From Macrostomum lignano (Eukaryota): a stretch of 64,000 bases of DNA. The notes below the pieces were generated by a model. The model did no database searches. It saw nothing but the letters and a program-made list of their open reading frames with translations, and was not told the DNA's origin. This document shows, in pieces, positions 1 to 20,849 of this stretch. Positions within the stretch are counted from its first letter, which is position 1, and each line of letters opens with the position of its first letter. Both the position numbers and the translations under genes were made by a program. Where the stretch lies: contig NIVC01000572.1 in assembly GCA_002269645.1 (NCBI GenBank), positions 323,669 through 387,668 of the forward strand, given 5' to 3'.

Positions 1-588
1 CACTTTTTCCCGAAAAAATACACTACGGAGATAGGAAGTTTTCATTTTTTCAGCACAAAAATTGTTATTGCGTTTGATAGGAGGCAGATCCAGTGTTCAT
101 CTTTTGATATGTTGTGCCTTTTTTATTGCTCTATCGGTATTTATAAAGCTTTTCGTTCAGAAAATTAGCTAGGATTCTATGTTAATTTTTTATTCTACGT
201 ATATTTCCTGGATCTAAAAATCACAAAAATGCATGACACAGCTCCAATATTTGGTTTTATGAACCTATTTTATCATCTCTGTAACAAATATTTGCTACAC
301 AGTCGGGTAAGAATGATAAAATAGACTCATGAAACCAAAGAGCCGAGCTGTGGCATTCTAATGTATTTCAAGCACAAGACACGCGAAAATATACGTAGAA
401 TAAAAAATTAACATAGAATCCCAATTTTCTGAACGAAAAGCTTTATAAATACCGATAGAGCAATAAAAAAGGCACAACATATCAAAAGATGAACACTGGA
501 TCTGCCTCCTATCAAACGCAATAACAATTTTTGTGCTGAAAAAATGAAAACTTCCTATCTCCGTAGTGTATTTTTTCGGGAAAAAGTG
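1..588. mobile_element. Foldback/MITE-like element with ~205-bp inverted repeats (left arm cut by the window start)
   Basis: 1-206 (cactttttcccgaaaaaatacactacggag...ctacgtatattt) is the near-perfect reverse complement of 387-588 (aaatatacgtag...ctccgtagtgtattttttcgggaaaaagtg), with a ~180-bp spacer. Confidence 0.8.
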
Positions 589-1500
589 CCTTCAAAACTT
601 TTCTAAGAAACGAGGTTTCCCGTCCTTCTACTTAAGTCGTCCTTGTGTAAAACTCGCCGCACAGATCCCATTCTATCGAAATAATATTAATATAAATACA
701 CTGACATATACTGGCCAAACAGGCTTCTCGCCTGAGCCAAACTTACTACTACTACTACCAAGAATTCACCGGGGCGGGGCGCATGGTCGTTATTGCACTC
801 TTTTGTAGCCATGTTTCGCTAAACTAGACCTGTCTGAATTTTGTATTAATAATTTTAATCTTCATTTCTCAGAGAGAAGAGAAGAGCCTAAATATTGCTT
901 TATGATTTTTTTCAATGGTTTCCTTGGGGTTGGAATTATTTGGTCCTAATGCCAATGGTTCTAATTGGGCTTATTATTAAGTCTAAGACAGTAGGCCCTA
1001 TATACAATATTAAGCTTATTATATTATAATCTCACAATATTAGACCTATACCATATTACTGATATTAGCCGCCCTTCCCAAAAAAGCTTGACAGAACATA
1101 TTATTATGCCCCCAAAAACCTAAATTTGCACCCTCTAAACTTGATTTTTCGCCTCCAAATGCCTCTTTTGCACCCCTTAGCTTGATTTTTCACCTCCTAA
1201 ATGCATTTTTGCACCCCTTAGCTTAAAATTGGCATCCTATATACTTGTATACTTGTATTGGTGCTCCAAACTTGGACCGCTCTCCCCAAAATGAAACTAG
1301 ATCCACCATTGCGTTGATTTATACTGGCTATTCACCATTGTCTTACTTTTTACTAAACATGCAACTTACACCTATGACCTAGGCCTATTTGTGTCTATAA
1401 AAAAAACCGTAAAACAAAAAGCAATGTAATTGTAAGTAAATATTAAGAGTAACTAGGCCTATGATTATCTTATTAAGTCTACAAATGCTTTATCATTTAA

Positions 1501-2080
1501 GGCAGACTTGCTTATCCCACCAAAGGAATAATTTCTGTCTTATTCCAACAGTACCGTGGGAATAATTTTCTGCTTATCTGCATGGCACAATGACAAGATA
1601 GCTGCCCTATCTTCTACAAAAGCCATGGGAATAATTTTTTCCCATAATATTGTTGAAGCAATGCAATAATCTAGGCCTATACAAAGAAATTGCGAATTTA
1701 CATAAATAGTAGAATTCTACAGAAGCAGCGATGGACTTTAATCGGAATCGGGATTAGACTTGGCTAAAAATTCAAATTATAAACAATTACTAGAGCAATT
1801 TACCTTAAATCATATGTCATAGGCCTAAATATAAAAAGTGTTTTTTGCATAAAAAGGCCATTAAATCTTTACTTCTATAAAATAAATGGTCAAGCAAAGT
1901 TATGTTGTTATACTGCACTTAAACCATAAGTACTAAACTAAATTATTCCCACGGCTTGTGTAAAAGATAGGGCAACTATCTTGTCAGTGTGCCATGGGGA
2001 TAAGAAGAAAATTATTCCCATAATACTGGTATTGTATCCACGGTATTGTATTCCTACAGTACCGTGGGGATAAGCACTGC
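1501..2080. mobile_element. MITE-like non-autonomous element with imperfect terminal and subterminal inverted repeats
   Basis: Left end ggcagacttgcttatcccac vs right end gtgggataagcactgcc. An inner inverted pair gacaagatagctgccctatctt / aagatagggcaactatcttgtc. A related fragment (gtgggataagcact) lies near 27710. Confidence 0.6.
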
Positions 2081-2599
2081 CATCGTTTAAATAGTATTGT
2101 CTAAGCCTATATTTTTGGGTAGGAATTTTTGTGACTTACCTTGGTTGGGCCTCTTGCTAACTAGCTAGATCAGCCAGGTTGGCTTGATATTGCGTATGTA
2201 TATAGACTAAATAGATTTAACTTCAAATAGACCTATGTCCTATGCCTATAACTATAATATATTTTGTATGGCATATTTTTGGCTAATATAGTTGCTGCAA
2301 AAAGTCTAATAACATTGTGCAAAAAAATTGGAAATTATTTCATGCCTCTGTCACTTTACTAGCAAAATTGAAACTCTTATTGCAGTTTTTACTAATTGTT
2401 TACTCATGCTTCATACTTAGTGAAATTTTCTAAAACTTATTTTTCAGTGCATTGTAATAAATCCATCATGTGTAAAGTTGTGAATTTACTTGGAAAAAAG
2501 TCTAGCACCACTACAGTTTCTATTCTATCAATTAGAGGCTAGTAAACTAGAGCAAGTCAGTTAATATGAAATTTATTTTGTACTTATAGTAGCACCTAT

Positions 2600-3707
2600 C
2601 ATCAATATTAATACCTTTTTTGGATGGCCCTTCAACCATAGAACCTCTGTGCAGCACTTTGGCATGTATTCCATCTGCCAAGAGCAAAGTTAAGGGCTGA
2701 TGCTCTCTCACTGTTGCTGCACTGCTTGCCACAGAGTGTCTAGGGAGTATGGGTGGTACTTGGCAATGTGCACCTTTATGACTTGCCACAAATTTTCTAT
2801 CGGTAAAAGGTTGGGTGACTGTCTAGGTCAATGTAGCACATAAATTCACCTCTTCTGCAACAGCTGCTTTACAATTTGTACTATATGGCAAGAGGCATTG
2901 CCTTGCTAGAAGATAATATTAGCCAGTTAAATGCTGTTGCACATATGGCAGCATCACTTGTAATAGCAGCTCATGATAATGCATACTATTGATGGCATTG
3001 TCGAGGCCGACAATTGGTCCAATGCCAGCAGTGCTGATGCAGCCCCAAATAATTATGGAGCCTCCACCTCAGTTGCAGTTTGGTTCAGAGCAAAGGGCTG
3101 CAGGCGCTCTCTTGTGTGCTAGCAAAGTTGCTGATATCTGTCGCAGTACAGGTGGTTTACTTTGCTCTTGTCAGAGAAGAGCACGAGATGCCACTGCTCC
3201 TGTGTCCTGCAGGTGCTCATGGCCCATTGCTGATAAATGCAACAGTTGCGCTCAGACATAAGTGGCTTTTTCACTGCGTAGCAGCTGGCCAGCCCAGTCT
3301 CCAGCAGTCGGTTGCAGACTGTCTACACCAAGATTTGGGGCAAGGGAATCTCGTCGTTGCGCGGGGATGACCAGAACAAAGCTGGCTGTTGGTGCTGCCA
3401 GTCATTGGAGCGTCCTGCTGACGGTGGATGCTGAAATTCACAAATCTCGGGCAATTTCATAGTGTCCATAACTTTCATCATGCCGTTGGACCATGCTTGG
3501 GCGCAACCTTGGGATTCACTCGGCCGTTTCTATTGGCAACACACACGTGTATGTCGCTATTGGACAGAATAGTAGTCACGTGACTGCTCTCAGCCAATAG
3601 CGACTTACATGTGTGTGTTGCCAATAGAAACGGCCGGGTGATTCCCAAGGTTGCGCGCGTATGCGTTGGACGATAAGATCTTGTAGCTGCACACTTAGTT
3701 CTGCCAT
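2600..3707 (-). pseudogene. Tc1/mariner transposase pseudogene (stops and frameshifts), interrupted by a MITE
   Basis: After removing the MITE at 3492-3663 and one TSD copy, the minus strand reads MAELSVQLQDLIVQRHDESYGHYEIARDL*ISASTVSRTL (paired-type HTH). Later frame-shifted blocks read WHLVLFSDKSK, GGGSIIIWGCISTAGIG and PNLLPIENLWQVIK, which are Tc1 DDE motifs. Confidence 0.85.
3492..3663. mobile_element. 172-bp palindromic MITE, hAT-type (8-bp TSD)
   Basis: TSD CGTTGGAC at 3484-3491 and 3664-3671. Long inverted arms gcgcaaccttgggattcactcggccgtttctattggcaacacacac / gtgtgtgttgccaatagaaacggccgggtgattcccaaggttgcgc. Ends are CAT...ATG. Confidence 0.9.
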
Positions 3708-3789
3708 GACTTGTTCAAAGGCAAAATTTCAATGAAAATGCTGCAGGGCAAAACATGTTCAAAACATGGTGTCCCATTGATCAAGCTTG

Positions 3790-5539
3790 GATAACTGCGT
3801 GATAGTGCTTACTGGTGGTGGCTCCAATTACAAGTTCAGCGTTCAATAGCTGGTTAGCTCGATCTTTGACTAAGGTGGCTAGGTCACGTAGTGATATAGT
3901 GTTCTCGACATCAGGATGGACAAAACACAACAGCAAGTCGCTGCAAAGTTCATCTAGACTGGCTGACAGTAGGTGTATTTGTGTTGATTCCCGCTGGAAA
4001 AGCTTTTGAATTTTCTAACATCTAAGTAGTGTCTCTTCCAGAAACTGCAGGCGTGCTACTCTTGCATTCTTTAGCATTCTTGATTCAAGCATTCTTGATT
4101 GAAGTAAGCTTCAATTTGCCAGTCGAGGTTGCTGGATTACCAAAAAATGCTTTCAGTGCCTCCCACTGTTCCAGCACATGCTGAACAACAGTCAGCACCT
4201 GCAGCCAACGAGTGTCTACTTGCCTAAGGAAAACGTGCTGAGCCAGTTTCATTGCTTCTTGGATCTGTATGTAAAGGAGAAAAATACAGAGACATGAATT
4301 TCACAATTCTACAAATTTCTGGATAGAACAATCTTTGCAATGTTTAAGTGGAAAGGGTATAAGGTATTACCTTTTGGAAATCATTGTGGCGATCTATGTA
4401 ACAAAAAATCTGTAAACATTGTCGAGTAGAGCCTCAACCTCACAATCTTCATCGAAGGCACGGACAGCGTACTGGACGCTATTATGTACATAATGTAGAC
4501 TGCATCCGCCAACATCGACAAGATGGGGCATTTCGGCACGCAACTTCGTCACGAGACCACCATGCGATCCTAAAAATAGCAGGAAAGCAGCTACTTGTAA
4601 CCTATAGTCTGCAACTCTGAATGTGAAATACAAATAAATTATGAAGATAATAAACTGGTATGTCTACTTGCCTCGCATGGCATCGCAAGAGTCGGTCATT
4701 ACTGACAATATTCAAATTATTTAATGTAAATATAATATTCAAATGGCAAATTATTGTCCTTCAAAACTTTTCACCAAAGCCTTCATGCCTTCAGCAGTTG
4801 CTTCCATCAGCTTCTCTGTGCCAATGTGCAACAGAAGAGCCTTCTGTTGCTCAGGGCAGAACATACGGCCAAAAATGACTAGCCACGACCGATCCCTTCG
4901 AGTCCCTTCATCCAGCAGGATAGAAAATGGTGCTGCTCTAAGCTAAGCTTCTGCATCATTAAACATTTTGCATAGAGGCTCAAAGCCTCACAGATCAGGT
5001 CGCTCGTCTTCTTTCTAGCTCGTACAGCGCTAGCATAGTTTTCAGCAATTTTACTGTCTGGCAACTGGGAAGGCGACAGGGGACAGGGATAACCTCCGCC
5101 AGCTCATCTGTGAACTGGAACGAGACATCCTTCTTTGCAATCAATGAACAAAATCGGAGACAAGCGGCCCCATTTGTTTGTCAGCATCCGGGTCTCTAGC
5201 AGATTCTTCATTATAGAAAAAAGATGTAGTTATCTTTTGGCTCTGTTACCCAAAATTCGACTGCTTGAGATGGTTCGTTGCTGATTTGTGCTTGGCACTG
5301 ATTACATGCTGGGAAATAACCACTGACTTTTGGCAACAGTAACAAAAAGCTTCGTCTAGCTTCCTGCCTTGGTGGTCAATAGCTTGCCGACACCATTGGC
5401 TTATCTCCAAGCCATTGCGATCATTCTCTTTCAGCCAGGCTTCAGAAAACTTAGTTTTGCGCTGAGCCTGAGTTGATGACGATGAACTTGAAGGCAAAGA
5501 AAAGCTCATGAATTTGCTTTTGGCTGAAATTAGAGGCAT
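3790..5539 (-). pseudogene. Intron-containing hAT-superfamily transposase pseudogene
   Basis: N-terminal zinc-finger-like block (KTKFSEAWL...WCR...AFCYCCQK...HVISAKH), then MDEGT, DSCDAMRG...GSHGGLVTKLR, CSLHYVHNS (CxxH) and VDTRWLQ. GT-AG introns near 4630-4680 and 4265-4370; frameshifts and stops. Confidence 0.75.
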
Positions 5540-5699
5540 TTGAAAGCTTAAAGCATGCAGTCTGAACTAAATACATGTGCAAGTGCAAGTTAATCCTTTA
5601 CATGTACGTTGTTGTTTCAACTACCGATTTTTTAAAAGTCAATAATGAGCATTAAAGACAAGAAAAAAGGTTCATAGTTTCATTTTTGAGCGCAGAAAT

Positions 5700-5860
5700 G
5701 ACCTCGTAGTAGCGCAGTTGAGCAAAAAAGTGGTCAAACTGCACCCGAGTGAACTACAGCAATGCAGAGTTAAGTGTCTTGCTTAGGACACAAATTGTTC
5801 CACGAGGGCCGAGAATTGAACCCCCAACCATTCAGCTATGAGCCCGACGCTCTAACCCCT
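5700..5860 (-). mobile_element. tRNA-derived SINE fragment
   Basis: Minus strand ggggttagagcgtcgggctcatagctgaatggttgggggttcaattctcgg carries a B-box-like GGTTCAATTC. It is followed by a ttgtgtcctaagcaagacactt core like that of many metazoan SINEs. Confidence 0.55.
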
Positions 5861-6051
5861 CTTTCATGATTCTTTCAGTATACAACTCACTCCAATCACT
5901 AAACTAGGCAGAACAATCATTTAATCAGTAGTGCAGTTACTCCTTTCCCAATGATATATGTACGTACCAACTGTGTCAAAACAATATACTGAATCATAAT
6001 CATATACTTAAATTTCTATCCTATGCATGTTAAATTCCAACATTCAAAGAA

Positions 6052-7739
6052 ATGTCCAATCCAATTGTATATTTTGATATTGACATTGATGGCAAGCCAG
6101 CTGGCCGCATAACATTTAAGCTCTATGCTGATATTGTGCCGAAAACTGCTGAGAATTTCCGCGCTCTCTGTACTGGAGAGAAGGGGATTGGTGAGTCAAT
6201 GACCTACATTCCATATGAATGACCTATATGCCAAATAAATGATCCGTTTTTTCATATGAATGACCCATATGCCAGATGAATGACTTATATGACAGGTAAA
6301 TGACCCATATGACAGGTGAAAGACCCATATCTCAGGTGGATGACCCATATCTCAGGTGAATGAACCATATGATAGGTGAATGACCCATATGACAGGTGAA
6401 TGACACATATGTCAGGTGAATGACCCATATCTCAGGTGAATGACCCATATCTCAGGTAAACGACCCATATCTCAGGTGAATGAACGATATGATAGGTGAA
6501 TGACCCATGTGATAAGTGAATGATCCATATGACAGGTGAATGACCCGTATCTCGGGTGAATGACCCGTATCTCGGGTGAATGACCCATATGACAGGTGAA
6601 TGACCCATATCTCAGGTGAATGAACCATATGATAGGTGAATGACCCATATGACAGGTGAATGACACATATGTCAGGTGAATGACCCATATCTCAGGTGAA
6701 TGACCCATATCTCAGGTAAACGACCCATATCTCAGGTGAATGAACGATATGATAGGTGAATGACCCATGTGATAAGTGAATGATCCATATGACAGGTGAA
6801 TGACCCGTATCTCGGGTGAATGACCCGTATCTCGGGTGAATGACCCGTATCTCGGGTGAATGACCCGTATCTCGGGTGAATGACCCATATGACAGGTGAA
6901 TGACCCATATCTCAGATGAATGACCCATATGACAGTTGAATGACCCATATGACAGGTGAATGACCCATATCTCAAGTGAATGACCCATATGACCGGTGAA
7001 TGACCCATATGACAGGTGAATGACCCATATCTCAGATGAATGACCCATATGACAGTTGAATGACCCATATGACAGGTGAATGACCCATATGACAGGTGAA
7101 TGACCCATATGACAGGTGAATGACCCATATGACCGGTGAATGACCCATATGACAGGTGAATGACCCATAAGACAGGTGAATGACCCATATGACAGGTGAA
7201 TGACCCATATGACAGGTGAATGACCCATATGACAGGTGAATGACCCATATCTCAGGTGAATGACCCATATGACAGGTGAATGACCATTCGCAATTCTCAA
7301 ATGGCAGGCTGACAGCTGCTCACACTTAGCAGAAAATCAGTCGCATTGAATCCCTTCAGGTGAAATCAGCGGCATGCCGCTGCACTACAAAGGCAGCAGC
7401 TTCCACCGGGTGATCCCGCAGTTCATGTGCCAGGGCGGCGACTTCACCCGCGGCAACGGCACCGGCGGCGAGTCCATCTACGGTGAGAAATTCCCCGACG
7501 AGAAATTCGCGATTAATCACAGCAAGCCGTTCCTGCTGTCTATGGCCAATGCCGGGCCGAACACGAACGGCAGCCAGTTCTTCATCACTACTGTCAGTAC
7601 TAGATGGCTGGATGGCAAGCACGTGGTATTTGGCGAAGTTGTCAGCGGTGAAGACGTGGTTAAACGCATGGAAAGTCTGGGGTCAGAGTCCGGTCGAACA
7701 TCTGCTTCGATTGTTATTGCTGACTGTGGACAGTTGTGA
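6052..7739 (+). CDS. Cytosolic single-domain cyclophilin (peptidyl-prolyl cis-trans isomerase, divergent-loop type), 172 aa; exons 6052-6190, 7360-7739
   Basis: Exon 1 [46 protein letters not shown] ends at G|gtgagt (phase 1); acceptor ccttcag| at 7359. Joined CDS is 519 nt. Active-site motifs [45 protein letters not shown] near 7806. Confidence 0.95.
6200..7285. repeat. 20-bp intronic minisatellite (tgacccatatgacaggtgaa and variants) with a 260-bp (13-mer) duplication
   Basis: Direct reading. The variant pattern starting tgaaccatatgatagg at 6361 recurs at 6621. Confidence 0.95.
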
Positions 7740-7946
7740 CTGTTTTGTGCAGCTGTGTCTGTTACAATTTGTGAATTTGTATCGGTTGGGACTAGTAATA
7801 GTGAAAATAAATCGGAATTATTCAATGTTTTGCATTTCGCGTTTTTTTAAAAACCAGTGTCCCGTTTTTTGTTTATTTTTATCGTTAAACATTAAATGCA
7901 GAGATTCAGGAGTGTAGCTAGGGACCTTTTATATGGGGGCGTTAGC

Positions 7947-8395
7947 GAGGAGCGCCAGCACCAAGGGGCGCCAGCACCAAGGGGCACCAGCACCAAGGGG
8001 CGCCAGCACCAAGGGGCGCCAGCACCAAGGGGCGCCAGCACCAAGGGGCGCCAGCACCAAAGGGCGCCAGCAGCAAGGGGCGCCAGCACCAAAGGGCGCC
8101 AGCACCAAATGGGGCGCCAGCACCAAAGCGCGCCAGCACCAAATGGGGCACCAGCACCAGGGGGCGCCAGCACCAAGGGGCGCCAGCACCAAATGGGGCG
8201 CCAGCACCAAATGGGGTGCCAGCACCAAATGGGGCGCCAGCACCAAATGGGGTGCCAGCACCAAATGGGGCGCCAGCACCAAATGGGGCGCCAGCACCAA
8301 AGCGCGCCAGCACCAAATGGGGCGCCAGCACTAAATGGGGCGCCAGCACCAAAGCGCGCCAGCACCAAATGGGGCGCCAGCACCAGGGGGCGCTA
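7947..8395. repeat. GC-rich 17-18-bp minisatellite (gcgccagcaccaagggg / gcgccagcaccaaatggg) between the cyclophilins, preceded by a TIR-like end at 7907
   Basis: Direct reading. caggagtgtagctaggg at 7907 resembles CAGGGGCG-type MITE termini. Confidence 0.9.
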
Positions 8396-8543
8396 GCAGA
8401 TTTAGAGACAACTTTAGCAACCATTTCTGCCTATACTAGCATATCTGCCCAAGCAGAAAATATTTTAAGCATATATGATAAGATTTCTATAGTTTGTTGA
8501 AATGAATCAGAAATCGTTAAAAAGGTATTGTTAATTATTGCAG

Positions 8544-9979
8544 GCCCTACCGTTTCGTTTGCTAAGCACCGCGGCCAATAAGGCTGGGCGGCCGCAGGTG
8601 TTCTTTGATGTTGCCGCCGATGGCAAATCGCTTGGCCGGGTTATTTTTAGTCTCTATTACGACAAGGTGCCGAAAACGGCCGAGAATTTTAGGGCACTGT
8701 GCGCTGGCGACAAGGGTGTTGGTAAGTGCTCATGTATCATGGAATGGATTGGTTCTGGGTGGTGACTGAGGCATCTGGGTGGTGACTGAGGCATCTGGGT
8801 GGTGACTGAGGCATCTGGGTGGTGACTGAGGCATCTGGGTGGTGACTGAGGCATCAGGTTAGTGACTGAGGCATCAGGTTGGTGACTGAGGCATCAAGTT
8901 AGTGACTGAGGCATCTGGGTGGTGACTGAGGCATCTGGGTGGTGACTGATGTATCTGGGTGGTGACTGAGGCATCAAGTTAGTGACTGAGGCATCTGGGT
9001 GGTGACTGATGCATCTGGGTGGTGACTGAGGCATCAGGTGGGTGACTGAGGCATCAGGTTTGTGACTGAGGCATCAGGTTGTGACTGAGGCATCTGGGTG
9101 GTGACTGATGCATCAGGTTGGTGACTGAGGCATCAGGTTGGTGACTGAGGCATAAAGTTGGTGACTGAGGCATCTGGGTAGTGACTGATGCATCAGGTTG
9201 GTGACTGAGGCATCAGTTTGGTGACTGATGCATCAGGTTGGTGACTGAAGCATCAGGTTGGTGACTGAGGCATCAGGTTGGTGACTGAGGCATCAGGTTG
9301 TGACTGAGGCATCAGGTTGTGACTGAGGCATCAGGTTGTGACTGAGGCATCAGGTTGTGACTGAGGCATCAGGTTGGTGACTGATGCATCAGGTTGGTGA
9401 CTGAGGCATCAGGTTGGTGACTGATGCATCAGGTTGGTGACTGATGCATATGAGTTGTGACTGAGGCATCAGTTTGTGACTGAGGCATCAGGTTGTGACT
9501 GATGCATATGAGTTGTGACTGAGGCATCAGTTTGTGACTGATGCATATGAGTTGTGACAGAAGTTTCTATTCTAAAAGAAGTTTCTCTTCAACCTTCAAC
9601 AGGAAAGAGCGGCATGCCGCTGCACTACAAAGGCAGCAGCTTCCACCGGGTGATCCCGCAGTTCATGTGCCAGGGCGGCGACTTCACCCACGGCAACGGC
9701 ACCGGCGGCGAGTCCATCTACGGCGAGAAATTCCCCGACGAGAATTTCTCCGTCCGTCACAGCAAGCCGTTCCTGCTGTCTATGGCCAATGCCGGGCCGA
9801 ACACGAACGGCAGCCAGTTCTTCATCACTACAGAGAAGACTCCATGGCTGGACGGCAAGCACGTGGTGTTTGGCGAGGTTGCCACAGGCGAAGACGTGGT
9901 TAAGGCTATTGAGAAGCTCGGTTCTCAGTCTGGTCGACCGGTTAAGAAAGTCACGATTGAGGACTGCGGCGAAGTGTAA
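8544..9979 (+). CDS. Second cyclophilin with a short basic N-terminal extension (probable mitochondrial cyclophilin D-like); exons 8544-8721, 9603-9979; start codon not in these exons
   Basis: Acceptor ttattgcag| at 8543, then [59 protein letters not shown] ending at G|gtaagt (phase 1, same intron position as gene 1). Acceptor caacag| at 9602. 555 nt in frame to TAA. Full PPIase motifs. Confidence 0.9.
8755..9557. repeat. 19-20-bp intronic minisatellite (ggtgactgaggcatctgggt / ggtgactgaggcatcaggtt)
   Basis: Direct reading. Confidence 0.95.
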
Positions 9980-10339
9980 AACAATGCCAGTCATCATTTT
10001 GCTGTTGATTAAACACTGAATTTAGACAAAATATACATCTAAGACAGCAAGCTATCTGTTTTTGGAAATCATGTTTGTTAAAAAAATTAATCATGTTAAT
10101 TTAATTCTGCTTTAAAAAGTTTTGTCTTTAGTATTTAAGGATAAAAGTGGACAGAGTTATAATTTACAAGTTATAAGAGGGACAGTTTAACATTATTCGT
10201 TTATCACTACGTGGAGTCTGCAGAAAGGTTGTGATACTCTTGTCTATAGATTCTGAACACATGCCCGAAATTCAACAATTTTTGCGAAGTCATTGGGAAA
10301 CGGAAAATTTCAGTTTTATTCGACTAGAAAGGGATTGTC

Positions 10340-10904
10340 TGTCTGCGGCGCTAAAATAAGTGCCTGCGGCGCCAAAATGAGTGCCTGAGGCGGCAAAATG
10401 AGTGGCTGAGGCGGCAAAATGAGTGCCTGTCTGCGGCGCCAAAATAAGTGTCTGCGGCGCCAAAATGAGTGCCTGCGGCGCCAAAATGAGTGCCTGCGGT
10501 GCCAAAATAAGTGCCTGTCTGCGGCGCCAAAATAAGTGTCTGCGGCGCCAAAATGAGTGCCTGCGGCGCCAAAATGAGTGCCTGCGGCGCCAAAATGAGT
10601 GCCTGCGGCGCCAAAATGAGTGCCTGAGGCGCCAAAATGAGTGCCTGCGGCGCCAAAAAAGGTGCCTGCAGCGCCAAAATGAGTGCCTGTCTGCGGCGCC
10701 AAAATAAGTGCTTGCAGCGCCAAAATGAGTGCCTGCGGCGCCAAAATGAGTGCCTGCGGCGCCAAAATGAGTGCCTGCGGCGCCAAAATGAGTGTCTGCG
10801 GCGCCAAAATGAGTGCTATGTGCATGTAGGAATTTTAGAAATCATATACATGTAGGATTCTTAGCTTTATCCCCCCCACTATAAAATCTATGGCGACGCC
10901 CCTG
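10340..10904. repeat. ~21-bp minisatellite (ctgcggcgccaaaatgagtgc) ending in a MITE-type terminus (ggcgacgcccctg)
   Basis: Tandem units 10340-10815; terminus cccccccactataaaatctatggcgacgcccctg at 10871-10904. Confidence 0.85.
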
Positions 10905-11733
10905 GGTTGTATATCAGAGAGGATTTCTATAGCAGAAATTTGTACAAGACCTTGAAATGAAATTTTGCAGGTATGCAAGCTACGAGCGTGTATTATGTAA
11001 ATTATGCTACAATTGTACATGGAGTCTGTGTATGCAGAAGTGGTTGCGGGCTTGTATCTATTGGCCCACACGACTTCATATACACGGCTAAAACTCAGAC
11101 TGCATCGATGGGGAAAAGAGAGAAAAAGCAGAAGAAGGAGCAGGTTGATGAGGTGGGGAGATTGGTACAATGAGCAGGTATAGCTGACTGCGCGGAGCGT
11201 GCGTACATTCTATAGGGAAGAATATAGATTTGGGAGGAGGAGACGACTGGAGAGGGATTATATAAGCGAGAGAGCAGCCCAAAGGACAGACAGGGACACA
11301 ATTGGCTGGAAGGCAAACTAATTGTACTTGCAACGCTGTAAAGTTAGCTGTAAAAAGGCTGCGTTGCATTAATGACTCATGCAGCGCTTCTACGAAGGAA
11401 TCCACATCAACTAGCTAGCTGCTAGCGTATTAAATAACGAGCTAAAAGGCTACACCTTTCTGCCTGCAGTCTGATTCAATTGTTCACATTGGACGCACAT
11501 TAGGCTAGTCAGACTGAACAAGGCTGAACAAATGCATGTAGTACTCAGCAGAAGCAGAAGCGACTATATTATCTTTCCTGCAGCTCTATTTATTTGCACA
11601 GAGGAAATAATTATAAAACTCAGAGGCAGAGAGAGACGACTCACTAAATATACACCCGAATAAGATAGATAGAACCGCGTGGACTCAAACAAACAGACTC
11701 AAACAGACAGTAAGTCCTAGCGATAGCACAATT

Positions 11734-13637
11734 ATGCATGCAATGCGATTAAAACGACCGTATTATCCGCTGCTAGCAGCTCTGGCAGCTGGCTGGCTCA
11801 TGGGTGCCCTGACTGTGCTGCTGCTACTGACTGAACGCGAGGTTGACCTGGTGCCACCTATGCCTGACGACGAGGCGGTCTGGCCCAGTCCAGCTATCGA
11901 TCCCGGGAACTTCAACTGCGACAACCGGCGCCGGAGGCCGCTGCAACCAACTGGCGACTTTGCCGCAGGGATGGCCTGGCAACGGATGCGTCAGAACGAC
12001 TCGATTTACTATTTCGAGCGACCGGGCAAGCTGCTGCCGATGCTGCGCCCGCTGTCCGAGAAGGAGGCCTCGGCCACCTACAGGGCCTCCGTGGCCAGGT
12101 CTTGGCTCGGCACCCAGACACTGGTGATCGCGGCCACTGTGAGAAATGGCATGCCTAACTTGGAGAACAGTTTGCAGAATATTGGCCGACTGCGGACTCT
12201 GTTCAGGCAGAGCTGGGTGCTGCTAGTTGAGAACGACTCTGATGATGGCACTAGAGAGAGGCTGCTGCGGCTGGCCAGGCTCGATCCCCGAGTCCGCGTG
12301 CTCGGTTGTGGCCAGCCTAACAGCAAATCGCCATGCCGAATGAACCAGAGATACCACAGCGGCTCGGCGCACAGGCCCGGCTCCAATATGGAGAGGACAA
12401 TTGAGGAAGAGGTGCTCTTCGCCTTGCCGCATCTTTTATCCCGTAGGGAAAGGGTTGGTGATAAAAGATTCTGGGGTTTTTCACTCTAGAGGATGTTGAG
12501 GTCGGTCTCTTGATGCTATGGTGTCTAGAGTGATGCTATAGTGTCTAGAGTGATGCTATGGTGTCTAGAGTGATGCTATAGTGTCTAGAGTGATGCTATG
12601 GTGTCTAGAGTGATGCTATAGTGTCTAGAGTGATGCTATGGTGTCTAGAGTGATGCTATGGTGTCTGGAGTGATGCTATGGTGTCTAGAGTGATGCTATG
12701 GTGTCTAGAGTGATGCTATGGTGTCTAGAGTGATGCTATGGTGTCTAGAGTGATGCTATGGTGTCTAGAGTGATGCTATGGTGTCTAGAGTGATGCTATG
12801 GTGTCTAGAGTGATGCTATGGTGTCTAGAGTGATGCTATGGTGTCTAGAGTGATGCTATGGTGTCTAGAGTGGTGCTATGGTGTCTAGAGTGATGCTATG
12901 GTGTCTAGAGTGATGATTCACGGTCTCTAAAAAGTTGATGTCTATAAAGGGATGCTAGGGTCTTTAGTTTAGAGTTTGATAGGGTCTCTGGAGGGATGCT
13001 AGGGTCTCCAAGCGATGCTAAGAGGGTCTTTAAATCTCTAAAACTGTACATGTATTACAGAGGTAAGAATTTTTGTATCCCGGTTTAGATCGATCGCGGC
13101 CTGATCATGTCCGTCCTGCGCAACGAGTACCTGAACCACGCGTACAAACACCTGGGCAGCAGTGCTGACTTTCTATTGATAATCGATCCAGATTTAGCCT
13201 GGCACAGCTGGAACCTCAACAGCATTCTGCAAGGTCTGTACTACTTCAAGACGCGGCCGAAGCTGCAGCAGATGTGCGCTAGCACGGTCAGCTTATACGA
13301 TGGCAAACTGTACGACCCTTGCACGATTAACTTCTACAACAACAAGCGCTACGGCGAGGACACAAAGTATCCCTACGTAGACATCGAAAAGTCCATCTTA
13401 AAAGGGCCAAGGGACCTGCCACCAGTCAAGACTGAGAGCTGTTTTCAAGCGTTCTCGTTCTACCGATTCTCTGTGCTGCAATCGCGGAGGCTGCAATACG
13501 AGAGGAGCCACGGCGAGTGGATGTGCGAGCACAACACCCTGTCCAGGCAACTGGACGAGGTGTACCTGGACCCGCAGATGCGACTTGGAGTGTCGGACAG
13601 TGCGAATTACTATGTCTTAAACAGGAATCTGTTTTAA
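11734..13637 (+). CDS. Type II membrane GT-A-fold glycosyltransferase (CAP59/GT69-like or GT2-like); exons ~11734-12411 and 13089-13637
   Basis: N-terminal TM anchor (LLAALAAGWLMGALTVLLLL), LVIAATVRN, VLLVENDSDDGT, LIMSVLRNEYL and a DxD-like LIIDPD. Acceptor tttag| at 13088 is in phase 0. The donor at 12412 (gtgctc) is weak, so the junction is tentative. Confidence 0.7.
12515..12915. repeat. 20-bp intronic minisatellite (gtgtctagagtgatgctatg)
   Basis: Direct reading, ~20 near-perfect copies. Confidence 0.95.
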
Positions 13638-14794
13638 GGCAGATCGGCTTTTCATTTGACAGATCTTGTAGATCTTGTCACTGTAAGAAATTTGTGTCTG
13701 GTCTGTACCTACCCACAGAATATTAAAAATAGACAAAGTAACCTGTTGTAAGCTGAGAGTGACTGAGTGAGTGGCCCCTGAGTGACTCCTTTCTTTTCTC
13801 TTCTTTCCTCTCTCACCTGGCCCGCCATTAGCTGGATTATTTATTTGGCCCTTGCTTGAAGTAAACATTTTGCCGAGCCCAGGCTTAAGTAAGGCGTAGT
13901 TCTGTTTCCTTTAGACACAGGCAGTCAAGGCAATTTGTCCGTCTTTTAATGAGTGACAAATGCAAAGCTACTGTAAAATGATTAATCGATTCAAAGGAAT
14001 CAAAAGTTCGAGAAATAGGATTCGCGTCGTGCCACGGCTAACAATTGTGCTTGACACGCTTGCTTCATTTAGAATTTGAAGTAACTTGCACTGAATGTAA
14101 CTCGTGTAGCTATATTTGTTATTGTAAATCTCTGCTTTTAATGCGCACTGCCCTATTTAAGAACGCAATGCTTCCTTGAGGAAATCTTTATCAAAACATT
14201 GAAGTAACTGGTAAGACTGCTATTTAATTTTTTGAGTTTCAATACTCACAATAAATTAATATTGATGGCTATTAGAAGTTTGAATTTAATAAGACAGGCC
14301 ATGTGAATACATTGCTAATAATAAACTGTATTCTGTATATACTGCAAAACAAATGATAATAACAATATGCAGACACAGCAAAGCAAAACAGCAGCACATG
14401 ATGAGCAGCAGTTTTAACAACTTAAAGTACTACTTAATAAAAAAGCAAAGCTCAATAAAGCATATCATAGAATAAAGATTAATTATTGCACCAACCACAG
14501 ATGCTAGAATACCTAAATGTCACTCAAAAATGCGCTAATCTTGTCTTTGTTTCAATACCAACAATCTACTATGGCTTTCTACAAGCAGACGCATTAAATT
14601 AGCGTATTCATCTTGCTTTACCCACTCTAGGCTGCATTAGGCTCGAAATCATTTAACAGAAATCAATTAAGGACTGAAGATTGGGCCTAGCTATCAAGAA
14701 AAAGGGGGTGGCGCTTGAGACACCAGCCAGACCGATAAATAATTGGGATTTTCTCTTGCAAGCGTGTCTGACATTGACCTCTTTTCTTACAGCT

Positions 14795-15065
14795 ATCTTA
14801 TTGGCTGAGCTAGATTGGGCCAGCCCCTAGACTGAGTTTCGTCCGTCTTGACTTCCCCTCTCTCCTTACTGCTCTCTCATTGGCTGAGCTAGATTGGGCC
14901 TGCCCCCCCTAGGCTGAGTTTCGTTCGTCTTGACTTCCCCTCTCTCCTAACTGCTCTCTCATTGGCTGAGCCAGATTGGGCCTGCCCCCTAGACTGAGTT
15001 TCGTCCGTCTTGACTTCTCCTCTCTCCTTACTGCTCTCTCATTGGCTGAGCTAGATTGGGCCTGC
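14795..15065. repeat. ~80-bp tandem repeat, ~3.3 copies, with ATTGG (CCAAT) boxes
   Basis: attggctgag recurs at ~14800, 14880, 14961 and 15040. Confidence 0.85.
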
Positions 15066-15559
15066 CGAAGCCTGAGACCACAAATCCGAAAGGAAAGATT
15101 TCTAGCTGACACATTGAATTTCTGCGCAGATAGACTACTGAAAAAGAGTAGACGCTCAAATTTTTACCAGATTAAATTGTGAGTGACCATATCCAGTTTA
15201 TTCTGGTTTCTCTGGCACCAAAGGAAGTACTTAATAAAGACAGGCGAAAATCAGCTATCAATAAAAAGTACACACAAAAAGAGCCAATACAACCATATGT
15301 TGAAAAATTTTCGGCTAATTCTTATGTAATGAAAATATTAAAGTGTCAAAAACTGCAAAACTATATTTATTATTATTACAAAGATGAGATTAAAAGCAGG
15401 CTGACAGCGACTGAAAAAATTAAATAAATAAACTAACACCGAGATTAAGGTAGGTTGAAGACAAGGATATGAACTATTAAGTGTAAATAAATAAGTCTAA
15501 TATAATCTGATCTGTATATTAGACATAAGTTTCTAGGGCATAGTGGATTTGGAGGCAAA

Positions 15560-16300
15560 TATGATGGGGGATTAATGGGGCGGGTGGATCAGATGGTGGA
15601 TTAAAGGAGGGGCGGATCAGATGGTGGATTAAAGGAGGGGCGGATCAGATGGTGGATTAAAGGGGGGCGGATCAGATGGTGGATTAAAGGGGGGCGGATC
15701 AGATGGTGGATTAAAGGGGGCGGATCAGATGATGGATTAAAGGGGGGCGGATCAGATGATGGATTAAAGGGGGCGGATCAGATGGTGGATTAAAGGGGGC
15801 GGATCAGATGGTGGATTAAAGGGGGGCGGATCAGATGGTGGATTAAAGGGGGGCGGATCAGATGGTGGATTAAAGGGGGCGGATCAGATGGTGGATTAAA
15901 GGGGGGCGGATTAGATGGTGATTGGTGGATTAAAGGGGCGGATCAGATGGTGGATTAAAGGGGGGCGGATCAGGTGGTGGATTAAGGGGGGGGGGCGGAT
16001 CAGATGGTGGATTAAAGGGGGGCGGATCAGATGGTGGATTAAAGGGGGGCAGATCAGATGGTGGATTAAAGGGGGGCGGATCAGATGGTGGATTAAAGGG
16101 GGGCGGATCAGATGGTGGATTAAAGGGGGCGGATTAGATGGTGATTGGTGGATTAAAGGGGCGGATCAGATGGTGGATTAAAGGGGGCGGATCAGGTGGT
16201 GGATTAAAGGGGGGCGGATCAGATGGTGGATTAAAGGGGGGCGGATCAGATGGTGGATTAAAGGGGGGCAGATCAGATGGTGGATTAAAGGAGGGCGGAT
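15560..16300. repeat. ~27-28-bp minisatellite (ggcggatcagatggtggattaaagggg)
   Basis: Direct reading. Confidence 0.95.
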
Positions 16301-16619
16301 CAAATCTCAGATTAGATAAGAAGGCGGACAGAAAATTGAAGCCAGGCCAGCAGCTGCAGAAAGGCGACTCTAATAAGCCAATAAAAATGAATTTATTAGA
16401 CAGAGAAAATTTCATGTCACATTAAGAAAACTATTCTTAACAGATAAAAACTGATAACAAACGAGCTGGCGTAATGCGAGTGAATTGCACAATAACTTGA
16501 TATAAACAAATAACAATAAAGATACGAAAGACATTAATAATAAGACATTAATGTAAAAACAACAGAGTTGCCAAGCAAACTGCAAACTAATCCAGTGACA
16601 TTTCTAGCAATCAATCACA

Positions 16620-19454
16620 CCAGCAGCTGACGGGTGAGCAGACTTTTCCTTTGTTCTCTAAACTGATCGCCCACCTCGAAATCTTCTCTGCTGACTGAGT
16701 CATCGCCAGATTGGTCAGCCGGAGATGAAGAAGGAAGCTGAGAAAATCGCTGCTGCTGCTGCTGCTGAGATGCCTCGTTTGAGCTGACGGATCTGCCAGT
16801 CGGGCCGAGCTGACATTCAAAGTTATTATCAAATGGCTCGTTAATGGGGATATTCGATGAGAACGGGATATCACTAAATAGGGATATTTAAGAATGAGAT
16901 ATCTGTAAATGGCAATATTTGAGGAGAATGGGATACATGTAAATAGGGATATTTGACAATGGGATACCGGTAAATAGGGATATTTGACAATGGGATATCG
17001 GTAAATAGGGATATTTGACAATGGGATATCGGTAAATAGGGATATTTGACAATGGGATATCGGTAAATAGGGATAATTTCAGAGAACGGGATATCGATAA
17101 AATGGGGATATTTGAGAATGGGATATCGGTAAATGAAGATATTTGAGAATGGGATATCAGTAAGTGGAGGATATTTGAGAATGGGATATCAGTAAGTGGA
17201 GGATATTTGAGAATGGGATATCGGTAAATGAAGATATTTGAGAATAGGATATCAGTAAGTGGGGGATATTTGAGAATAGGATATCAGTAAGTGGGGGATA
17301 TTTGAGAATGGGATATCAGTAAGTGGGGGATATTTGAGAATGAGATATCAGTAAGTGGGGGATATTTGAGAATGGGATATCAGTAAGTGGGGGATATTTG
17401 AGAATGGGATATCAGTAAGTGGGGGATATTTGAGAATGGGATATCAGTAAGTGGGGGATATTTGAGAATGGGATATCGGTAAATGGGGATATTTGAGAAT
17501 GGGATATCGGTAAATGGGGATATTTGAGAATAAGATATCAGTAAGTGGGGGATATTTGAGCAGAATAGGACATCCGAAAAATGCTCACAGTAAGTGAGTT
17601 ATAGCTAGCCGACTCGTCCAGTTCGCTGATTGAGCCAACACCGCCGCGGTTGCGCAGGGCTCGCAGGAACAAGCCGGCCACTTGGAAAACGTTCTTACCA
17701 ACGCAATGGTCACAGAGGACGCAGGCCAATAGCAGGCCCCAGCACAGTAGCACAGTTAGGCCACTGAGCGCTTGCAGAGCGGTAAGCAGCTGCCTTGGTT
17801 GCGGCTGAGTCCATGACACCGCCAGCGGCGGCAGAGCGACTGAGTGCAGCAGCAGACACAGCAGGCAGTGGCAGCGGTACATGCGCAGCTAATGGGGGGG
17901 GGACGAATTCGGGGCCATTGCGTACTTTGTTTTAATTCCACTAACAGCAGATGCCTAGCTGTCTTTGTTAGAAAATTTATATAAGAAAAAACTCACAGCA
18001 ATGGTTCTCGAGGTTCGCGCATAGCTCAAAGCCAAAATACTTAATAGTAACATCTGAAGAAGTAGAAGAGAAACAGATCGCAAAAAAGTTATTAGGCGAC
18101 TCTAGCGACTTTGGGGCGACTCTAGCGACTTGCGAGTTGCTGGATCGTAAGTAGCGAAAAATTCGTCATAGAGTGGTTGTGTTAGCGCTTACTCGCTTCT
18201 GCTAACTCAAGTAGACTAAATAGAGTTGTTTTCTAGAGTCACTGAATCGCAAAACTTCCGGGACCAATTTTGGTGCTCAAGCCCCCAATGAATGTGGAAT
18301 CACAAGAGAAGTTGAATTTGTGAGCGGCTTACTCCAAGTAACTCAAGACAATCCGAATAAGCGGGTCTTATTCAACCTACCAAAATTGCGCACCACAATG
18401 GGAAGCCAAAGGCGCCTGACACATCAAACGCTGACCAATTAACGTTCACTACAGTCGTATTAGCCTCACTAATCCGATTCAGTTCGTTAAAACTATTAGC
18501 CCGAATGGCAACGCTGGCAGACCAGAAGCTAAAGCCAATCAGAGCCAAACACAGCTGCATCCAGCCTAGCAATGGAGGCACCCGCGATCCAACCCGAGAC
18601 CCGATTATCAATAAGCTGTCATCGTCAATATCGCAGTCGCCGCTATTGCTGGAACTGCGCCATAGCCGGTATGGCTGGTGCGACGACTGCTGCTGAGATG
18701 GCAGCTCGTGAGCAGGCAAAAACAGGACATCCTCCGGCTGATGCTCCTGAAAATTCCAAATCTAAGAATCATATCCAGCCAAAACAGAATGCAAACAAAG
18801 GTGTAAAAGCACCTGCAAATTTTATAACCAAACTCAAGTTCTTTTTTTAATTCCTGATATTTAAAAAGGCTCAAGATTTTTGCATGTATTCTGAAATCTG
18901 AGGCCATAGTCAAACAAAAACTTGTTAATAGTTAGTAGGATAGAGGTAAACATAAAATGGAGTACAATCATGTAAAATTAGGATTTGAGGCAAACATTTG
19001 ATATTGTTGGCTGGGGTACCGCGCAGAATATCAGGCATTGGCAAACTCTGGCCTCTGTCTCTGACTCTCCCTAAGTCCCTTGGATCCATTGCAACTTTTG
19101 TCTTCTTTTCTGTTCCCTCTTCTCTCTCGTCCCTTGCCTCTCCTCTCTTTTCTCTCATCTCTCCTTTCTTCTCTTTTATCTCTTCTCAATTCTCTCTGCT
19201 CTCTTTACTCTCTCTCCCCTCTTCTCACTCCTCACTCTCCGCTCTCTCAACACTTCCCTAATCTCTCCTCTCTCCTTTCTACAATCATCTCTCTAATCTC
19301 GATCCTCTCTCCTATCTATTCTTTACCTATTTCGTCTCATCTCTTCTCTCTCATCTCTAATTTGTACTCTTCTATTTATCATCTCTCCTCTCTTCTATTC
19401 TCTCTACTTTCTCTTCTTTACTCTCTTATCTCTTAACTCTCTCGTCTCTACTCT

Positions 19455-19549
<95 letters not shown>

Positions 19550-20143: not shown

Positions 20144-20849
20144 GAGCTGGATTCTTTGGAGGTCTGGAGGTAAAAAGTCTGACCATCCCTGCTTGGAAAG
20201 CCAGTTTGTGGGACGTAGTAACTCTCATGATTGTTCTCATGCTTTGATCATGCCATCTTTCTGGCCAATTCGCAATCCTGAAAGGAATTTGTGTATCTTC
20301 AGCCCCACTGCAGTCATCAGTCTAACAACCAAGGAAATACGCATTTCTTAGGCCATTTAAATTTTAAAGTACCTTTAAGAGAAACTTAAATTTTCCATGG
20401 TGTGACTAATTTAGTAGGATTTCATAAATTTCATAAATCGCTTTTTCATAAATCTTTCACTTTTACAAACCATGCTGGATTGGATTGCCTTGATTTGCCA
20501 TCCACTGATAAACTGCATGGCTGCTAAACGTAGCCTCTCCACTCGCGGGGTGCAGAGAAGGCTTTAAAAATTTATTCCAAAACACTGTACATTTGCTATG
20601 TACACTGAGCCCTATCGCCTGACCCTTTGTCTGAGCTGGGGGGATTCGGGGGAATGAGTGAGTGAGTGGCACAAACAACAAAAAGCAGACAAACTTCACA
20701 TGCTTACAGTTTCTGTTCTGATTGAGTTACAGAGTTGAAACTTTACATTAAGACAGAGACAGTCAATGAAAAATTGTGTCAAGTTTTAAGTCAATTGCTT
20801 TATGTGGACTAAACTTATGGAAGCTGAAAGTTAGTCAATTTTAAAACCC

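What the first reader, a model, noticed from the sequence alone, without database searches (positions are those of the whole stretch)
7740..8721. Cyclophilin 2 may take its start codon from a spliced leader, forming a two-gene cyclophilin operon
Seen: a clear acceptor (ttattgcag|, 8543) is followed in phase 0 by [13 protein letters not shown], a presequence-like peptide, with no ATG. Gene 1's AATAAA (~7806) and a U-rich tract (~7865) lie only ~250 bp upstream once the ~500-bp repeat insert is discounted. Established: flatworm SL RNAs end in AUG, which can act as initiator Met, and SL trans-splicing resolves polycistrons. Inference: SL-AUG gives [14 protein letters not shown]..., so trans-splicing would create the mitochondrial presequence. 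Alternative: a cis mini-exon MQRFRS at 7896-7913 with a weak donor (gtagct).
Basis: partly seen in the sequence, partly recalled or inferred. Interest (0 to 1): 0.7.

Follow-up and report, generated by a model that had tools for sequence, protein, structure and literature searches.

The report
Cyclophilin gene started by spliced leader
In the flatworm Macrostomum lignano, the second of two tandem cyclophilin genes has no start codon of its own and almost certainly gets its AUG from the trans-spliced leader RNA; this mechanism is already known in flatworms, so the case is tidy but ordinary.

Summary
The window is Macrostomum lignano scaffold NIVC01000572.1, a flatworm whose 35-nt spliced leader (SL) ends in ATG.

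- **Start codon from the SL: supported.**
  - Cyclophilin 2 (8544-8721 + 9603-9979) opens directly after TTATTGCAG|, which fits the published trans-splice acceptor motif. It has an in-frame TAA 9 nt upstream and no in-frame ATG before codon 63.
  - GenBank protein PAA80639.1 starts at exactly this base and is flagged partial. That is what the published SL-read-based annotation pipeline would produce.
  - Two other assembly copies read ATG instead of CAG at the junction. I read this as an imprint of SL-bearing RNA-seq reads, because the assembly was polished with RNA-seq. Two other cyclophilin junctions show the same overwriting.
- **Rival start rejected.** All five candidate cis mini-exons, MQRFRS included, have poor donors.
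- **Operon: plausible, not shown.** The pair meets the published operational criterion (353 nt stop-to-acceptor after removing the 451-bp minisatellite). Co-transcription is not demonstrated.
- **Mitochondrial presequence: plausible on composition only.**

The mechanism is already documented in flatworms, so this is a new example, not a new kind.

The parts
6025..6029 (+). GCATG, identical to the last 5 nt of the SL, abutting the 5' end of cyclophilin 1 (junction 6029|6030). Probable trans-splice site whose acceptor was overwritten in this assembly copy.
   Evidence: L002, L003 and L004 read cctattTTCAG|TTAAATTCC at the same place, and all 4 changed bases equal the SL bases. The assembly was polished with RNA-seq.
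6052..6190 (+). Cyclophilin 1, exon 1, with its own ATG. The GenBank CDS PAA80638.1 starts at 6040 and is flagged partial.
6191..7359 (+). Cyclophilin 1 intron (phase 1, GTGAGT...TTCAG), filled by a 20-nt minisatellite at 6198-7285.
7360..7739 (+). Cyclophilin 1, exon 2, including the TGA stop.
7806..7811 (+). AATAAA poly(A) signal of cyclophilin 1, conserved in all assembly copies.
7865..7881 (+). T-rich tract downstream of the poly(A) signal. Its role is unknown; likening it to the nematode Ur element is an analogy only.
7948..8398 (+). Intergenic 16-17-nt minisatellite (AGGGGCGCCAGCACCAA, 26.8 copies). Present in every copy, with variable copy number.
8532..8534 (+). In-frame TAA 9 nt upstream of the exon. 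It excludes any unspliced upstream start.
8535..8543 (+). Trans-splice acceptor TTATTGCAG. TTGCAG fits the published motif [T/C]TNCAG.
8544..8721 (+). Cyclophilin 2, first coding exon. No ATG; the SL AUG would be in frame, giving [23 protein letters not shown]...
   Evidence: identical to PAA80639.1, partial. The exon is 100% identical in 5 assembly copies.
8722..9602 (+). Cyclophilin 2 intron (phase 1, GTAAGT...AACAG), with a 20-nt minisatellite at 8757-9546.
9603..9979 (+). Cyclophilin 2, exon 2, including the TAA stop. Partly homogenised with exon 2 of gene 1.

Best explanation
Cyclophilin 2 is an SL trans-spliced gene of Macrostomum lignano.

- **Mechanism.** Its pre-mRNA is cut at the acceptor TTATTGCAG| (8543) and joined to the 35-nt spliced leader. 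The leader's last three bases, AUG, then sit directly in front of GCC (8544), in frame and in a strong context (G at -3, G at +4). They serve as the initiator codon.
- **Product.** The result is a 185-aa divergent-loop cyclophilin. Its first 15-17 residues ([17 protein letters not shown]) are basic, acid-free and moderately amphiphilic. This is probably a short mitochondrial presequence that the neighbouring paralogue lacks.
- **Gene arrangement.** The gene lies 804 nt downstream of cyclophilin 1 on the same strand (353 nt once the minisatellite is removed). The two are plausibly transcribed as one precursor that polyadenylation and trans-splicing resolve.

Shown: the sequence anatomy, the species and its SL, the annotated CDS boundary, and the ATG imprint in other copies. 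Inferred: actual use of the SL AUG, co-transcription, and mitochondrial import.
For: 1. **Species.** The gene product is identical to M. lignano PAA80639.1, and the window equals NIVC01000572.1 base for base.
2. **SL and acceptor motif.** The SL ends in ATG and the trans-splice acceptor motif is [T/C]TNCAG (PMC8629364). The Macrostomum genome paper itself calls the SL's final ATG a translation start codon (PMC10468722).
3. **Annotation boundary.** The annotation pipeline cuts transcripts at peaks of SL-trimmed reads and then runs TransDecoder (PMC5730564). A 5'-partial CDS starting at 8544, with an in-frame TAA at 8532, requires a transcript 5' end at 8542-8544. The same boundary is annotated on two other scaffolds.
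4. **No alternative start.** There is no in-frame ATG before codon 63. The Pfam and PDB matches to the cyclophilin domain start at residue 16-23.
5. **Poor rival donors.** All five ATG-containing cis mini-exon candidates have donors GTTTTT, GTGTAG, GTAGCT, GTTAGC or GTTTGT. The real donors here are GTGAGT and GTAAGT.
6. **ATG imprint.** Copies L002 and L003 read ttattgATG|GCC where the window and L004 read ttattgCAG|GCC. At three cyclophilin junctions, 10 of 10 changed bases equal the SL base with no length change at two junctions (the third also differs by one T in a T-run). The assembly was Pilon-polished with RNA-seq. This points to reads carrying ...AUG|GCCCUACC.
7. **Precedent.** SL-AUG initiation is experimentally established in flatworms (Cheng et al. 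2006, as cited in PMC9851317 and PMC3510090).
8. **Operon criterion.** The published criterion is a repeat-adjusted distance under 1 kb. Here it is 353 nt.
9. **N-terminal composition.** The first 19 residues have 3 K/R, 0 D/E and 7 A/L, with maximum muH 0.61, versus 0.42 and 3 acidic residues in gene 1.
Against: - **No transcript read.** I could read no SL-exon transcript directly. No M. lignano transcript is held in the searchable collections.
- **Weak points in two arguments.** 'Partial' alone is not proof, because gene 1 is also flagged partial although it has an ATG. The imprint argument depends on my inference about polishing.
- **Operon.** The 145-bp AT-rich segment 8399-8543 could hold a promoter of its own. 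Most trans-spliced M. lignano genes are not in operons.
- **Presequence.** It is very short. Its amphiphilicity is not exceptional (681 of 5000 shuffles do as well). No targeting predictor was available.
- **Orthology.** The protein is a divergent-loop cyclophilin, not an orthologue of vertebrate PPIF.
Confidence: 0.8

Rival explanations
1. The SL AUG is used, but the gene is monocistronic. Cyclophilin 2 has its own promoter in the AT-rich 145 bp between the minisatellite and the acceptor, or within the repeat, and a short outron. The pair is then a tandem duplicate, not an operon.
For: About 60% of trans-spliced M. lignano genes are not assigned to operons, and the operon call is a distance threshold only. 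TATA-like strings (catatatgataag, 8470-8482) lie about 65 nt upstream of the acceptor. No read-through evidence was obtained.
Against: The repeat-adjusted spacing of 353 nt falls inside the published operon class. The TATA-like string is disrupted by a 4-bp indel in L002 and L003.
Confidence: 0.4
2. A cis-spliced upstream mini-exon supplies the ATG, for example MQRFRS at 7896-7913.
For: Five ATG-started open stretches end at a phase-0 GT between 7740 and 8543. The MQRFRS stretch is present in all copies.
Against: None of the donors fits GT[G/A]AG. Two candidates start inside the gene 1 3' UTR, next to its poly(A) signal. The annotated CDS begins at the acceptor with nothing upstream.
Confidence: 0.04
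3. The main product is a two-domain fusion. A donor inside the last exon of gene 1 (ATT|GTTATT, 7713|7714) is cis-spliced to the same acceptor, as in UniRef A0A1I8GH40 (348 aa).
For: A deposited model from the earlier ML2 assembly joins ...GRTSASI|ALPFRLL.... Acceptors shared between cis- and trans-splicing are reported in parasitic flatworms.
Against: The donor GTTATT is poor. The later transcript-boundary-based annotation splits the genes. The model looks like a predictor bridging two homologous domains. At most it is a minor isoform. If real, it would itself prove co-transcription.
Confidence: 0.05
4. The ATG in copies L002 and L003 is real DNA. Within one genome the same start codon would then be either encoded (ATG) or outsourced to the SL (CAG acceptor). 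The two states are interconvertible through AAG, which is still an AG acceptor.
For: Two scaffolds carry ATG and two carry CAG, with an otherwise identical exon. The path ATG-AAG-CAG keeps a start codon at every step (inference).
Against: The same kind of overwriting, with the SL's own bases, occurs at two other junctions where it creates no useful codon; length is unchanged at one of them, and the other also differs by one T in a T-run. RNA-seq was used for polishing. A real RNA-templated event would be expected to change length.
Confidence: 0.1

Closest known systems
Flatworm SL 3'-terminal AUG used as initiator methionine (Cheng, Cohen, Ndegwa & Davis 2006, J Biol Chem 281:733; 'slORFs' of PMC9851317; Echinococcus EST survey PMC3510090)
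   Same: The SL ends in AUG. The acceptor sits at the first codon of the ORF. The SL AUG is needed for an N-terminus that covers the conserved domain.
   Different: Those data are from Schistosoma and Echinococcus. For M. lignano I found only a remark that the final ATG is a start codon (PMC10468722), with no gene-level description. This cyclophilin is not mentioned in any held paper.
M. lignano operons with repeat-filled spacers (Ustyantsev & Berezikov 2021, PMC8629364; transcriptional units of Wudarski et al. 2017, PMC5730564)
   Same: Same-strand neighbours, a trans-spliced downstream gene, a spacer inflated by a tandem repeat, and an adjusted distance under 1 kb.
   Different: Membership here is by the distance rule only. 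The 353-nt adjusted spacer is longer than the ~100-nt mode. The two genes are paralogues from a tandem duplication, which is not typical of operons.
Echinococcus granulosus thioredoxin glutathione reductase: trans-spliced mRNAs encoding mitochondrial and cytosolic variants (Agorio et al. 2003, cited in PMC12582326 and PMC2873472)
   Same: A flatworm case where SL trans-splicing and the choice of 5' end decide whether a mitochondrial leader peptide is made.
   Different: There, one gene gives two variants through alternative transcription starts. Here, two tandem genes appear to divide the roles, and the presequence is only predicted.
Divergent-loop cyclophilins (C. elegans CYP-3, PDB 1dyw; plant cyclophilins) and mitochondrial cyclophilin PPIF/CypD
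   Same: PF00160 domain, with an ungapped match to 1dyw and 2mc9 that includes the KSGxPLHY loop. An N-terminal extension as in mitochondrial forms.
   Different: It is not an orthologue of vertebrate PPIF, which lacks the loop. The extension is much shorter than my recollection of about 29 aa for the PPIF presequence (from memory, not checked here).

Membership tests
SL-AUG-initiated ORF (flatworm slORF) | The organism has SL trans-splicing with an SL ending in AUG. | tested here: met
   The window is M. lignano. The SL sequence is published.
SL-AUG-initiated ORF (flatworm slORF) | An AG acceptor of trans-splice type lies immediately 5' of the first coding base. | tested here: met
   TTATTGCAG|GCC at 8535-8544. 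It fits [T/C]TNCAG.
SL-AUG-initiated ORF (flatworm slORF) | The SL AUG is in frame with the main ORF, and no genomic in-frame AUG can give the conserved N-terminus. | tested here: met
   TAA at 8532; first Met at codon 63; the domain starts at about residue 16.
SL-AUG-initiated ORF (flatworm slORF) | SL-bearing transcripts are observed at this junction. | tested here: inconclusive
   Indirect only. The annotated 5'-partial CDS boundary comes from an SL-read-based pipeline. An ATG imprint is present in copies L002 and L003. No read could be inspected.
SL-AUG-initiated ORF (flatworm slORF) | Translation starts at the SL AUG. | not testable with these tools
   Needs ribosome profiling, N-terminal proteomics or a reporter.
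Flatworm operon (polycistronic transcription unit) | Same-strand adjacent genes with a trans-spliced downstream gene, at a repeat-adjusted distance under 1 kb. | tested here: met
   804 nt raw, 353 nt adjusted. Criterion from PMC8629364.
Flatworm operon (polycistronic transcription unit) | A precursor RNA spanning both genes. | not testable with these tools
   No RNA data were accessible. The fused model A0A1I8GH40 is only a weak hint.
Cyclophilin-type PPIase (PF00160) | A full-length domain match above the curated cut-off. | tested here: met
   170.4 bits against a cut-off of 21.7, residues 23-183. PDB matches reach E = 8e-82.
Mitochondrial cyclophilin | A cleavable N-terminal matrix-targeting presequence. 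| tested here: inconclusive
   Net charge +3, no acidic residue, rich in A/L/S/T, an R-x-L|S motif, muH 0.61. It is only about 15 aa long, and the shuffle test is not significant. TargetP and MitoFates were not available.
Mitochondrial cyclophilin | Orthology to PPIF/CypD. | tested here: not met
   It carries the divergent loop that is missing from PPIF and CypA (gapped alignment lengths). Its closest relative is the cytosolic-type neighbour, gene 1.

The most novel reading that the evidence does not exclude
The ATG-versus-CAG difference between homeologous copies is real DNA, not a polishing imprint. In one genome the same initiator codon would then be either hard-wired or outsourced to the spliced leader, through an ATG-AAG-CAG path that never loses a start codon. 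SL addition would also decide whether a recently duplicated cyclophilin acquires a mitochondrial presequence.
Probability: 0.1. Interest if true: 0.6.

Novelty: new member of a known kind. Interest (0 to 1): 0.3.

Why it matters
- **For the gene.** It turns a GenBank entry flagged 'partial' into a complete 185-aa protein. It also suggests which of the tandem cyclophilins is the organellar one in a regeneration model that can be made transgenic.
- **For annotators.** It is a clear example of why SL-terminal ATGs must be considered when calling CDS starts in flatworms.
- **For users of Mlig_3_7.** The by-product may be more useful than the gene. The assembly appears to carry SL-derived base changes that erase AG acceptors at trans-splice sites of highly expressed genes. 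This would bias motif and splice-site statistics: only 9,551 of 21,754 trans-splice sites showed the acceptor motif in PMC8629364. The link between those two facts is my inference.

Tried and rejected
- **Rfam scan of the window** and **tRNA scan**: nothing found.
- **SL RNA gene.** The full SL is absent from the four loci searched (L001, which equals window 1-19979, and L002-L004), and no SL-3'-end match in the whole window belongs to an SL RNA gene.
- **SL resemblance of the acceptor.** TAATTATTGCAG upstream of 8544 looks like the SL 3' end AATTTATTGCATG. The ungapped search with up to 3 mismatches does not pick it up, and window-wide matches are at chance level (13 found, 13.5 expected). 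I treat it as acceptor-like composition.
- **Direct transcript evidence.**
  - The 90% cluster holds only six GenBank/UniProt models, none starting MALPF.
  - The metagenome scan for the exon 5' end found nothing.
  - The gene identifiers are absent from the held papers and supplements.
- **A possible second case.** 'ctgcATG|GCTGCTAAACG' at 20517 stops after 16 codons and is not a gene.
- **SL-suffix enrichment.** TGCATG is only mildly enriched in the window (41 found, 26.8±5 expected), so it cannot be used alone to map trans-splice sites.
- **Gene 3 (11734).** Its start region differs between copies in an SL-like way, but with length changes. This does not fit the overwrite pattern, and I left it unresolved.

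Full report
**What is in the sequence**

The region holds two tandem cyclophilin genes on the + strand. Each has one phase-1 intron at the same position.
- Gene 1 is 6052-6190 + 7360-7739. It encodes 172 aa and has its own ATG.
- Gene 2 is 8544-8721 + 9603-9979. It encodes 184 codons and has no ATG.

The acceptor ttattgcag ends at 8543. Upstream, the frame reads TAA (8532-8534), TTA, TTG, CAG. The first in-frame Met is codon 63. The Pfam and PDB matches to the cyclophilin fold begin at about residue 16-23, so a start at Met63 could not give a folded enzyme.

- AATAAA at 7806-7811.
- The T-rich tract at 7865-7881.
- The 451-bp minisatellite at 7948-8398.
- The MQRFRS|gtagct stretch at 7896-7913.

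**Whose genome it is**

The gene 2 product is identical over all 184 residues to GenBank PAA80639.1 (BOX15_Mlig001778g7, 'partial') of Macrostomum lignano. The first 19,979 bases of the window match scaffold NIVC01000572.1 of assembly GCA_002269645.1 (Mlig_3_7) exactly.

M. lignano has a single 35-nt spliced leader, CGGTCTCTTACTGCGAAGACTCAATTTATTGCATG. About 30% of its genes are trans-spliced. The enriched motif at trans-splice acceptors is [T/C]TNCAG (PMC8629364). TTGCAG at 8538-8543 fits that motif.

**Why the SL AUG is the start codon**

The Mlig_3_7 annotation was made in three steps (PMC5730564):
- SL-bearing RNA-seq reads were trimmed and mapped.
- Transcriptional units were cut at the resulting peaks (the TBONE pipeline).
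- ORFs were called with TransDecoder.

A 5'-partial ORF that begins at 8544 while an in-frame stop lies at 8532 can only arise if the transcript model begins at 8542-8544. That is exactly at the AG| boundary. The same boundary is annotated on two further scaffolds (PAA47629.1/PAA70350.1).

With the SL attached, the mRNA reads ...UUGCAUG|GCC. This has G at -3 and G at +4 and gives [14 protein letters not shown]....

The rival cis mini-exons were enumerated. Five ATG-started open stretches end on a phase-0 GT. Their donors are GTTTTT, GTGTAG, GTAGCT, GTTAGC and GTTTGT. The two real donors in this locus are GTGAGT and GTAAGT, and the species consensus is GT[G/A]AG.

**An unexpected second line of evidence**

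The exon is 100% identical in five assembly copies. Immediately upstream of it:
- The window and L004 read ttattgCAG|.
- L002 and L003 read ttattgATG|.

Taken at face value, this is a DNA-encoded Met at the very position of the SL AUG. However, the same kind of change occurs at two other cyclophilin 5' junctions:
- Gene 1 reads cctatGCATG|TTAAATT in the window and cctattTTCAG|TTAAATT in three other scaffolds.
- The unlinked Mlig001299 cyclophilin reads acaTGCATG|AATAG in L005 and L006 and acaTTGCAG|AATAG in L007.

Across the three junctions, 10 of 10 changed bases within the last six positions equal the SL base at that position. At the gene 2 and Mlig001299 junctions there is no length change; at the gene 1 junction the copies also differ by one T in a T-run.

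[quoted passage not shown] Position-by-position overwriting of the last 2-5 outron bases by SL bases is what short, unclipped SL tails on abundant RNA-seq reads would produce. A true RNA-templated conversion at these sites would be expected to insert a base, giving ATTGCATG from ATTGCAG.

I therefore read the ATG in L002 and L003 as an imprint of reads carrying ...AUG|GCCCUACC. This is an inference, at about 0.9. Either way it supports the junction. It also indicates that gene 1 is trans-spliced at 6029|6030. There the SL AUG is out of frame and opens a 16-codon uORF that overlaps the ATG at 6052.

**Operon**

Ustyantsev & Berezikov subtract repeats from intergenic distances. They call two same-strand genes an operon if the adjusted distance is under 1 kb and the second gene is trans-spliced. 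The mode between trans-spliced genes is about 100 bp.

Here the distance is 804 nt raw and 353 nt adjusted, so the pair qualifies. This is an operational call only:
- I saw no precursor RNA.
- The 145-bp AT-rich segment before the acceptor could hold a promoter.
- The older fused gene model A0A1I8GH40 uses a poor GTTATT donor.

I put co-transcription at about 0.55.

**Presequence**

The first 19 residues have 3 K/R, no D/E and 7 A/L. They contain an R-L-L|S motif of the R-3 type and have a maximum helical moment of 0.61. Gene 1 has 3 acidic residues and a moment of 0.42.

The extension is short, about 15-17 aa before the first strand of the fold. In addition, 14% of shuffles reach the same moment. 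It does not look like an ER signal, because an Arg interrupts the hydrophobic run (my reading of the sequence).

The protein carries the divergent loop KSGMPLHY, like C. elegans CYP-3 (1dyw). It is therefore not a PPIF orthologue. If it is mitochondrial, that function arose through a lineage-specific tandem duplication. I put mitochondrial targeting at about 0.55.

**Comparison with what is known**

- Use of the flatworm SL AUG as initiator was shown experimentally by Cheng et al. 2006. It was found to be needed for dozens of Schistosoma cDNAs and for many Echinococcus transcripts (PMC9851317 and PMC3510090).
- All reported flatworm SLs end in ATG (PMC12582326).
- The Macrostomum genome paper explicitly treats the final ATG as a start codon that complicates annotation (PMC10468722).
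- Operons with repeat-inflated spacers are described for this species.

No held paper mentions this gene.

**Verdict**

This is a correct and careful reading by the first stage. It is a new example of a known mechanism and is already implicit in a deposited 'partial' gene model. Interest is 0.3. The most useful new point is the likely SL imprint in the assembly.

Noticed in passing
window 6025-6029; L002/L003 5998-6000; L005/L006 about 2409-2414 (versus L007): Some copies in the Mlig_3_7 assembly carry the last 2-5 bases of the spliced leader in place of the AG acceptor at trans-splice junctions. The change keeps length at two of the three junctions, and 10 of 10 changed bases match the SL. 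This is probably an imprint of RNA-seq reads used for Pilon polishing. It would erase acceptors and create false ATGs elsewhere in this assembly.
   Followed up: partly
window 7360-7739 versus 9603-9979: The second exons of the two paralogues share identical runs of 82, 33 and 75 nt (86% identity overall). The first-exon cores are only 67% identical. The unusual Met in SGMPLHY is shared by both genes on this scaffold, and Lys is shared by both on L003. This suggests gene conversion between the tandem copies, or cross-mapped polishing reads.
   Followed up: partly
window 6198-7285, 7948-8398, 8757-9546, 10343-10816: Both introns and both flanking spacers are each filled by a different 16-21-nt minisatellite. 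The unit in the gene 1 intron repeats a donor-like CAG|GTGAAT about 50 times. The unit in the gene 2 intron (GGTTGGTGACTGA) resembles the exon 1 donor region. The real splice sites must be chosen among many decoys.
   Followed up: no
L004 3747-10900 (NIVC01001597.1): A tandem duplication of about 4.8 kb covers gene 1 plus exon 1 of gene 2. It underlies the odd 202-aa model PAA66031.1, whose first 36 residues are exon 1 read in another frame. It is either a real duplication or an assembly error.
   Followed up: partly
window 7713|7714 to 8543|8544: UniRef A0A1I8GH40 (348 aa, from the earlier ML2 annotation) fuses the two cyclophilins. It splices from a weak GTTATT donor inside the last exon of gene 1 to the same acceptor. 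If any such reads exist, they would prove co-transcription.
   Followed up: no
window 8595-8600: An in-frame internal CAG|GTG precedes [11 protein letters not shown] addition there would give a presequence-less MVFFD... isoform. The context is GC-rich and does not fit the acceptor motif.
   Followed up: no
window 11734-11742 versus L002-L004: The next gene downstream (408 aa) has three extra codons (ATGCATGCA) on this scaffold. Its upstream sequence, CAATTATGCATG, resembles the SL 3' end, but with length differences from the other copies. Unresolved.
   Followed up: partly
window about 5700-5860, minus strand: By eye, this stretch looks tRNA-derived: it has a B-box-like GGTTCAATTCTCGGCCC on the minus strand. 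It may be a SINE. ARAGORN calls no tRNA here.
   Followed up: no
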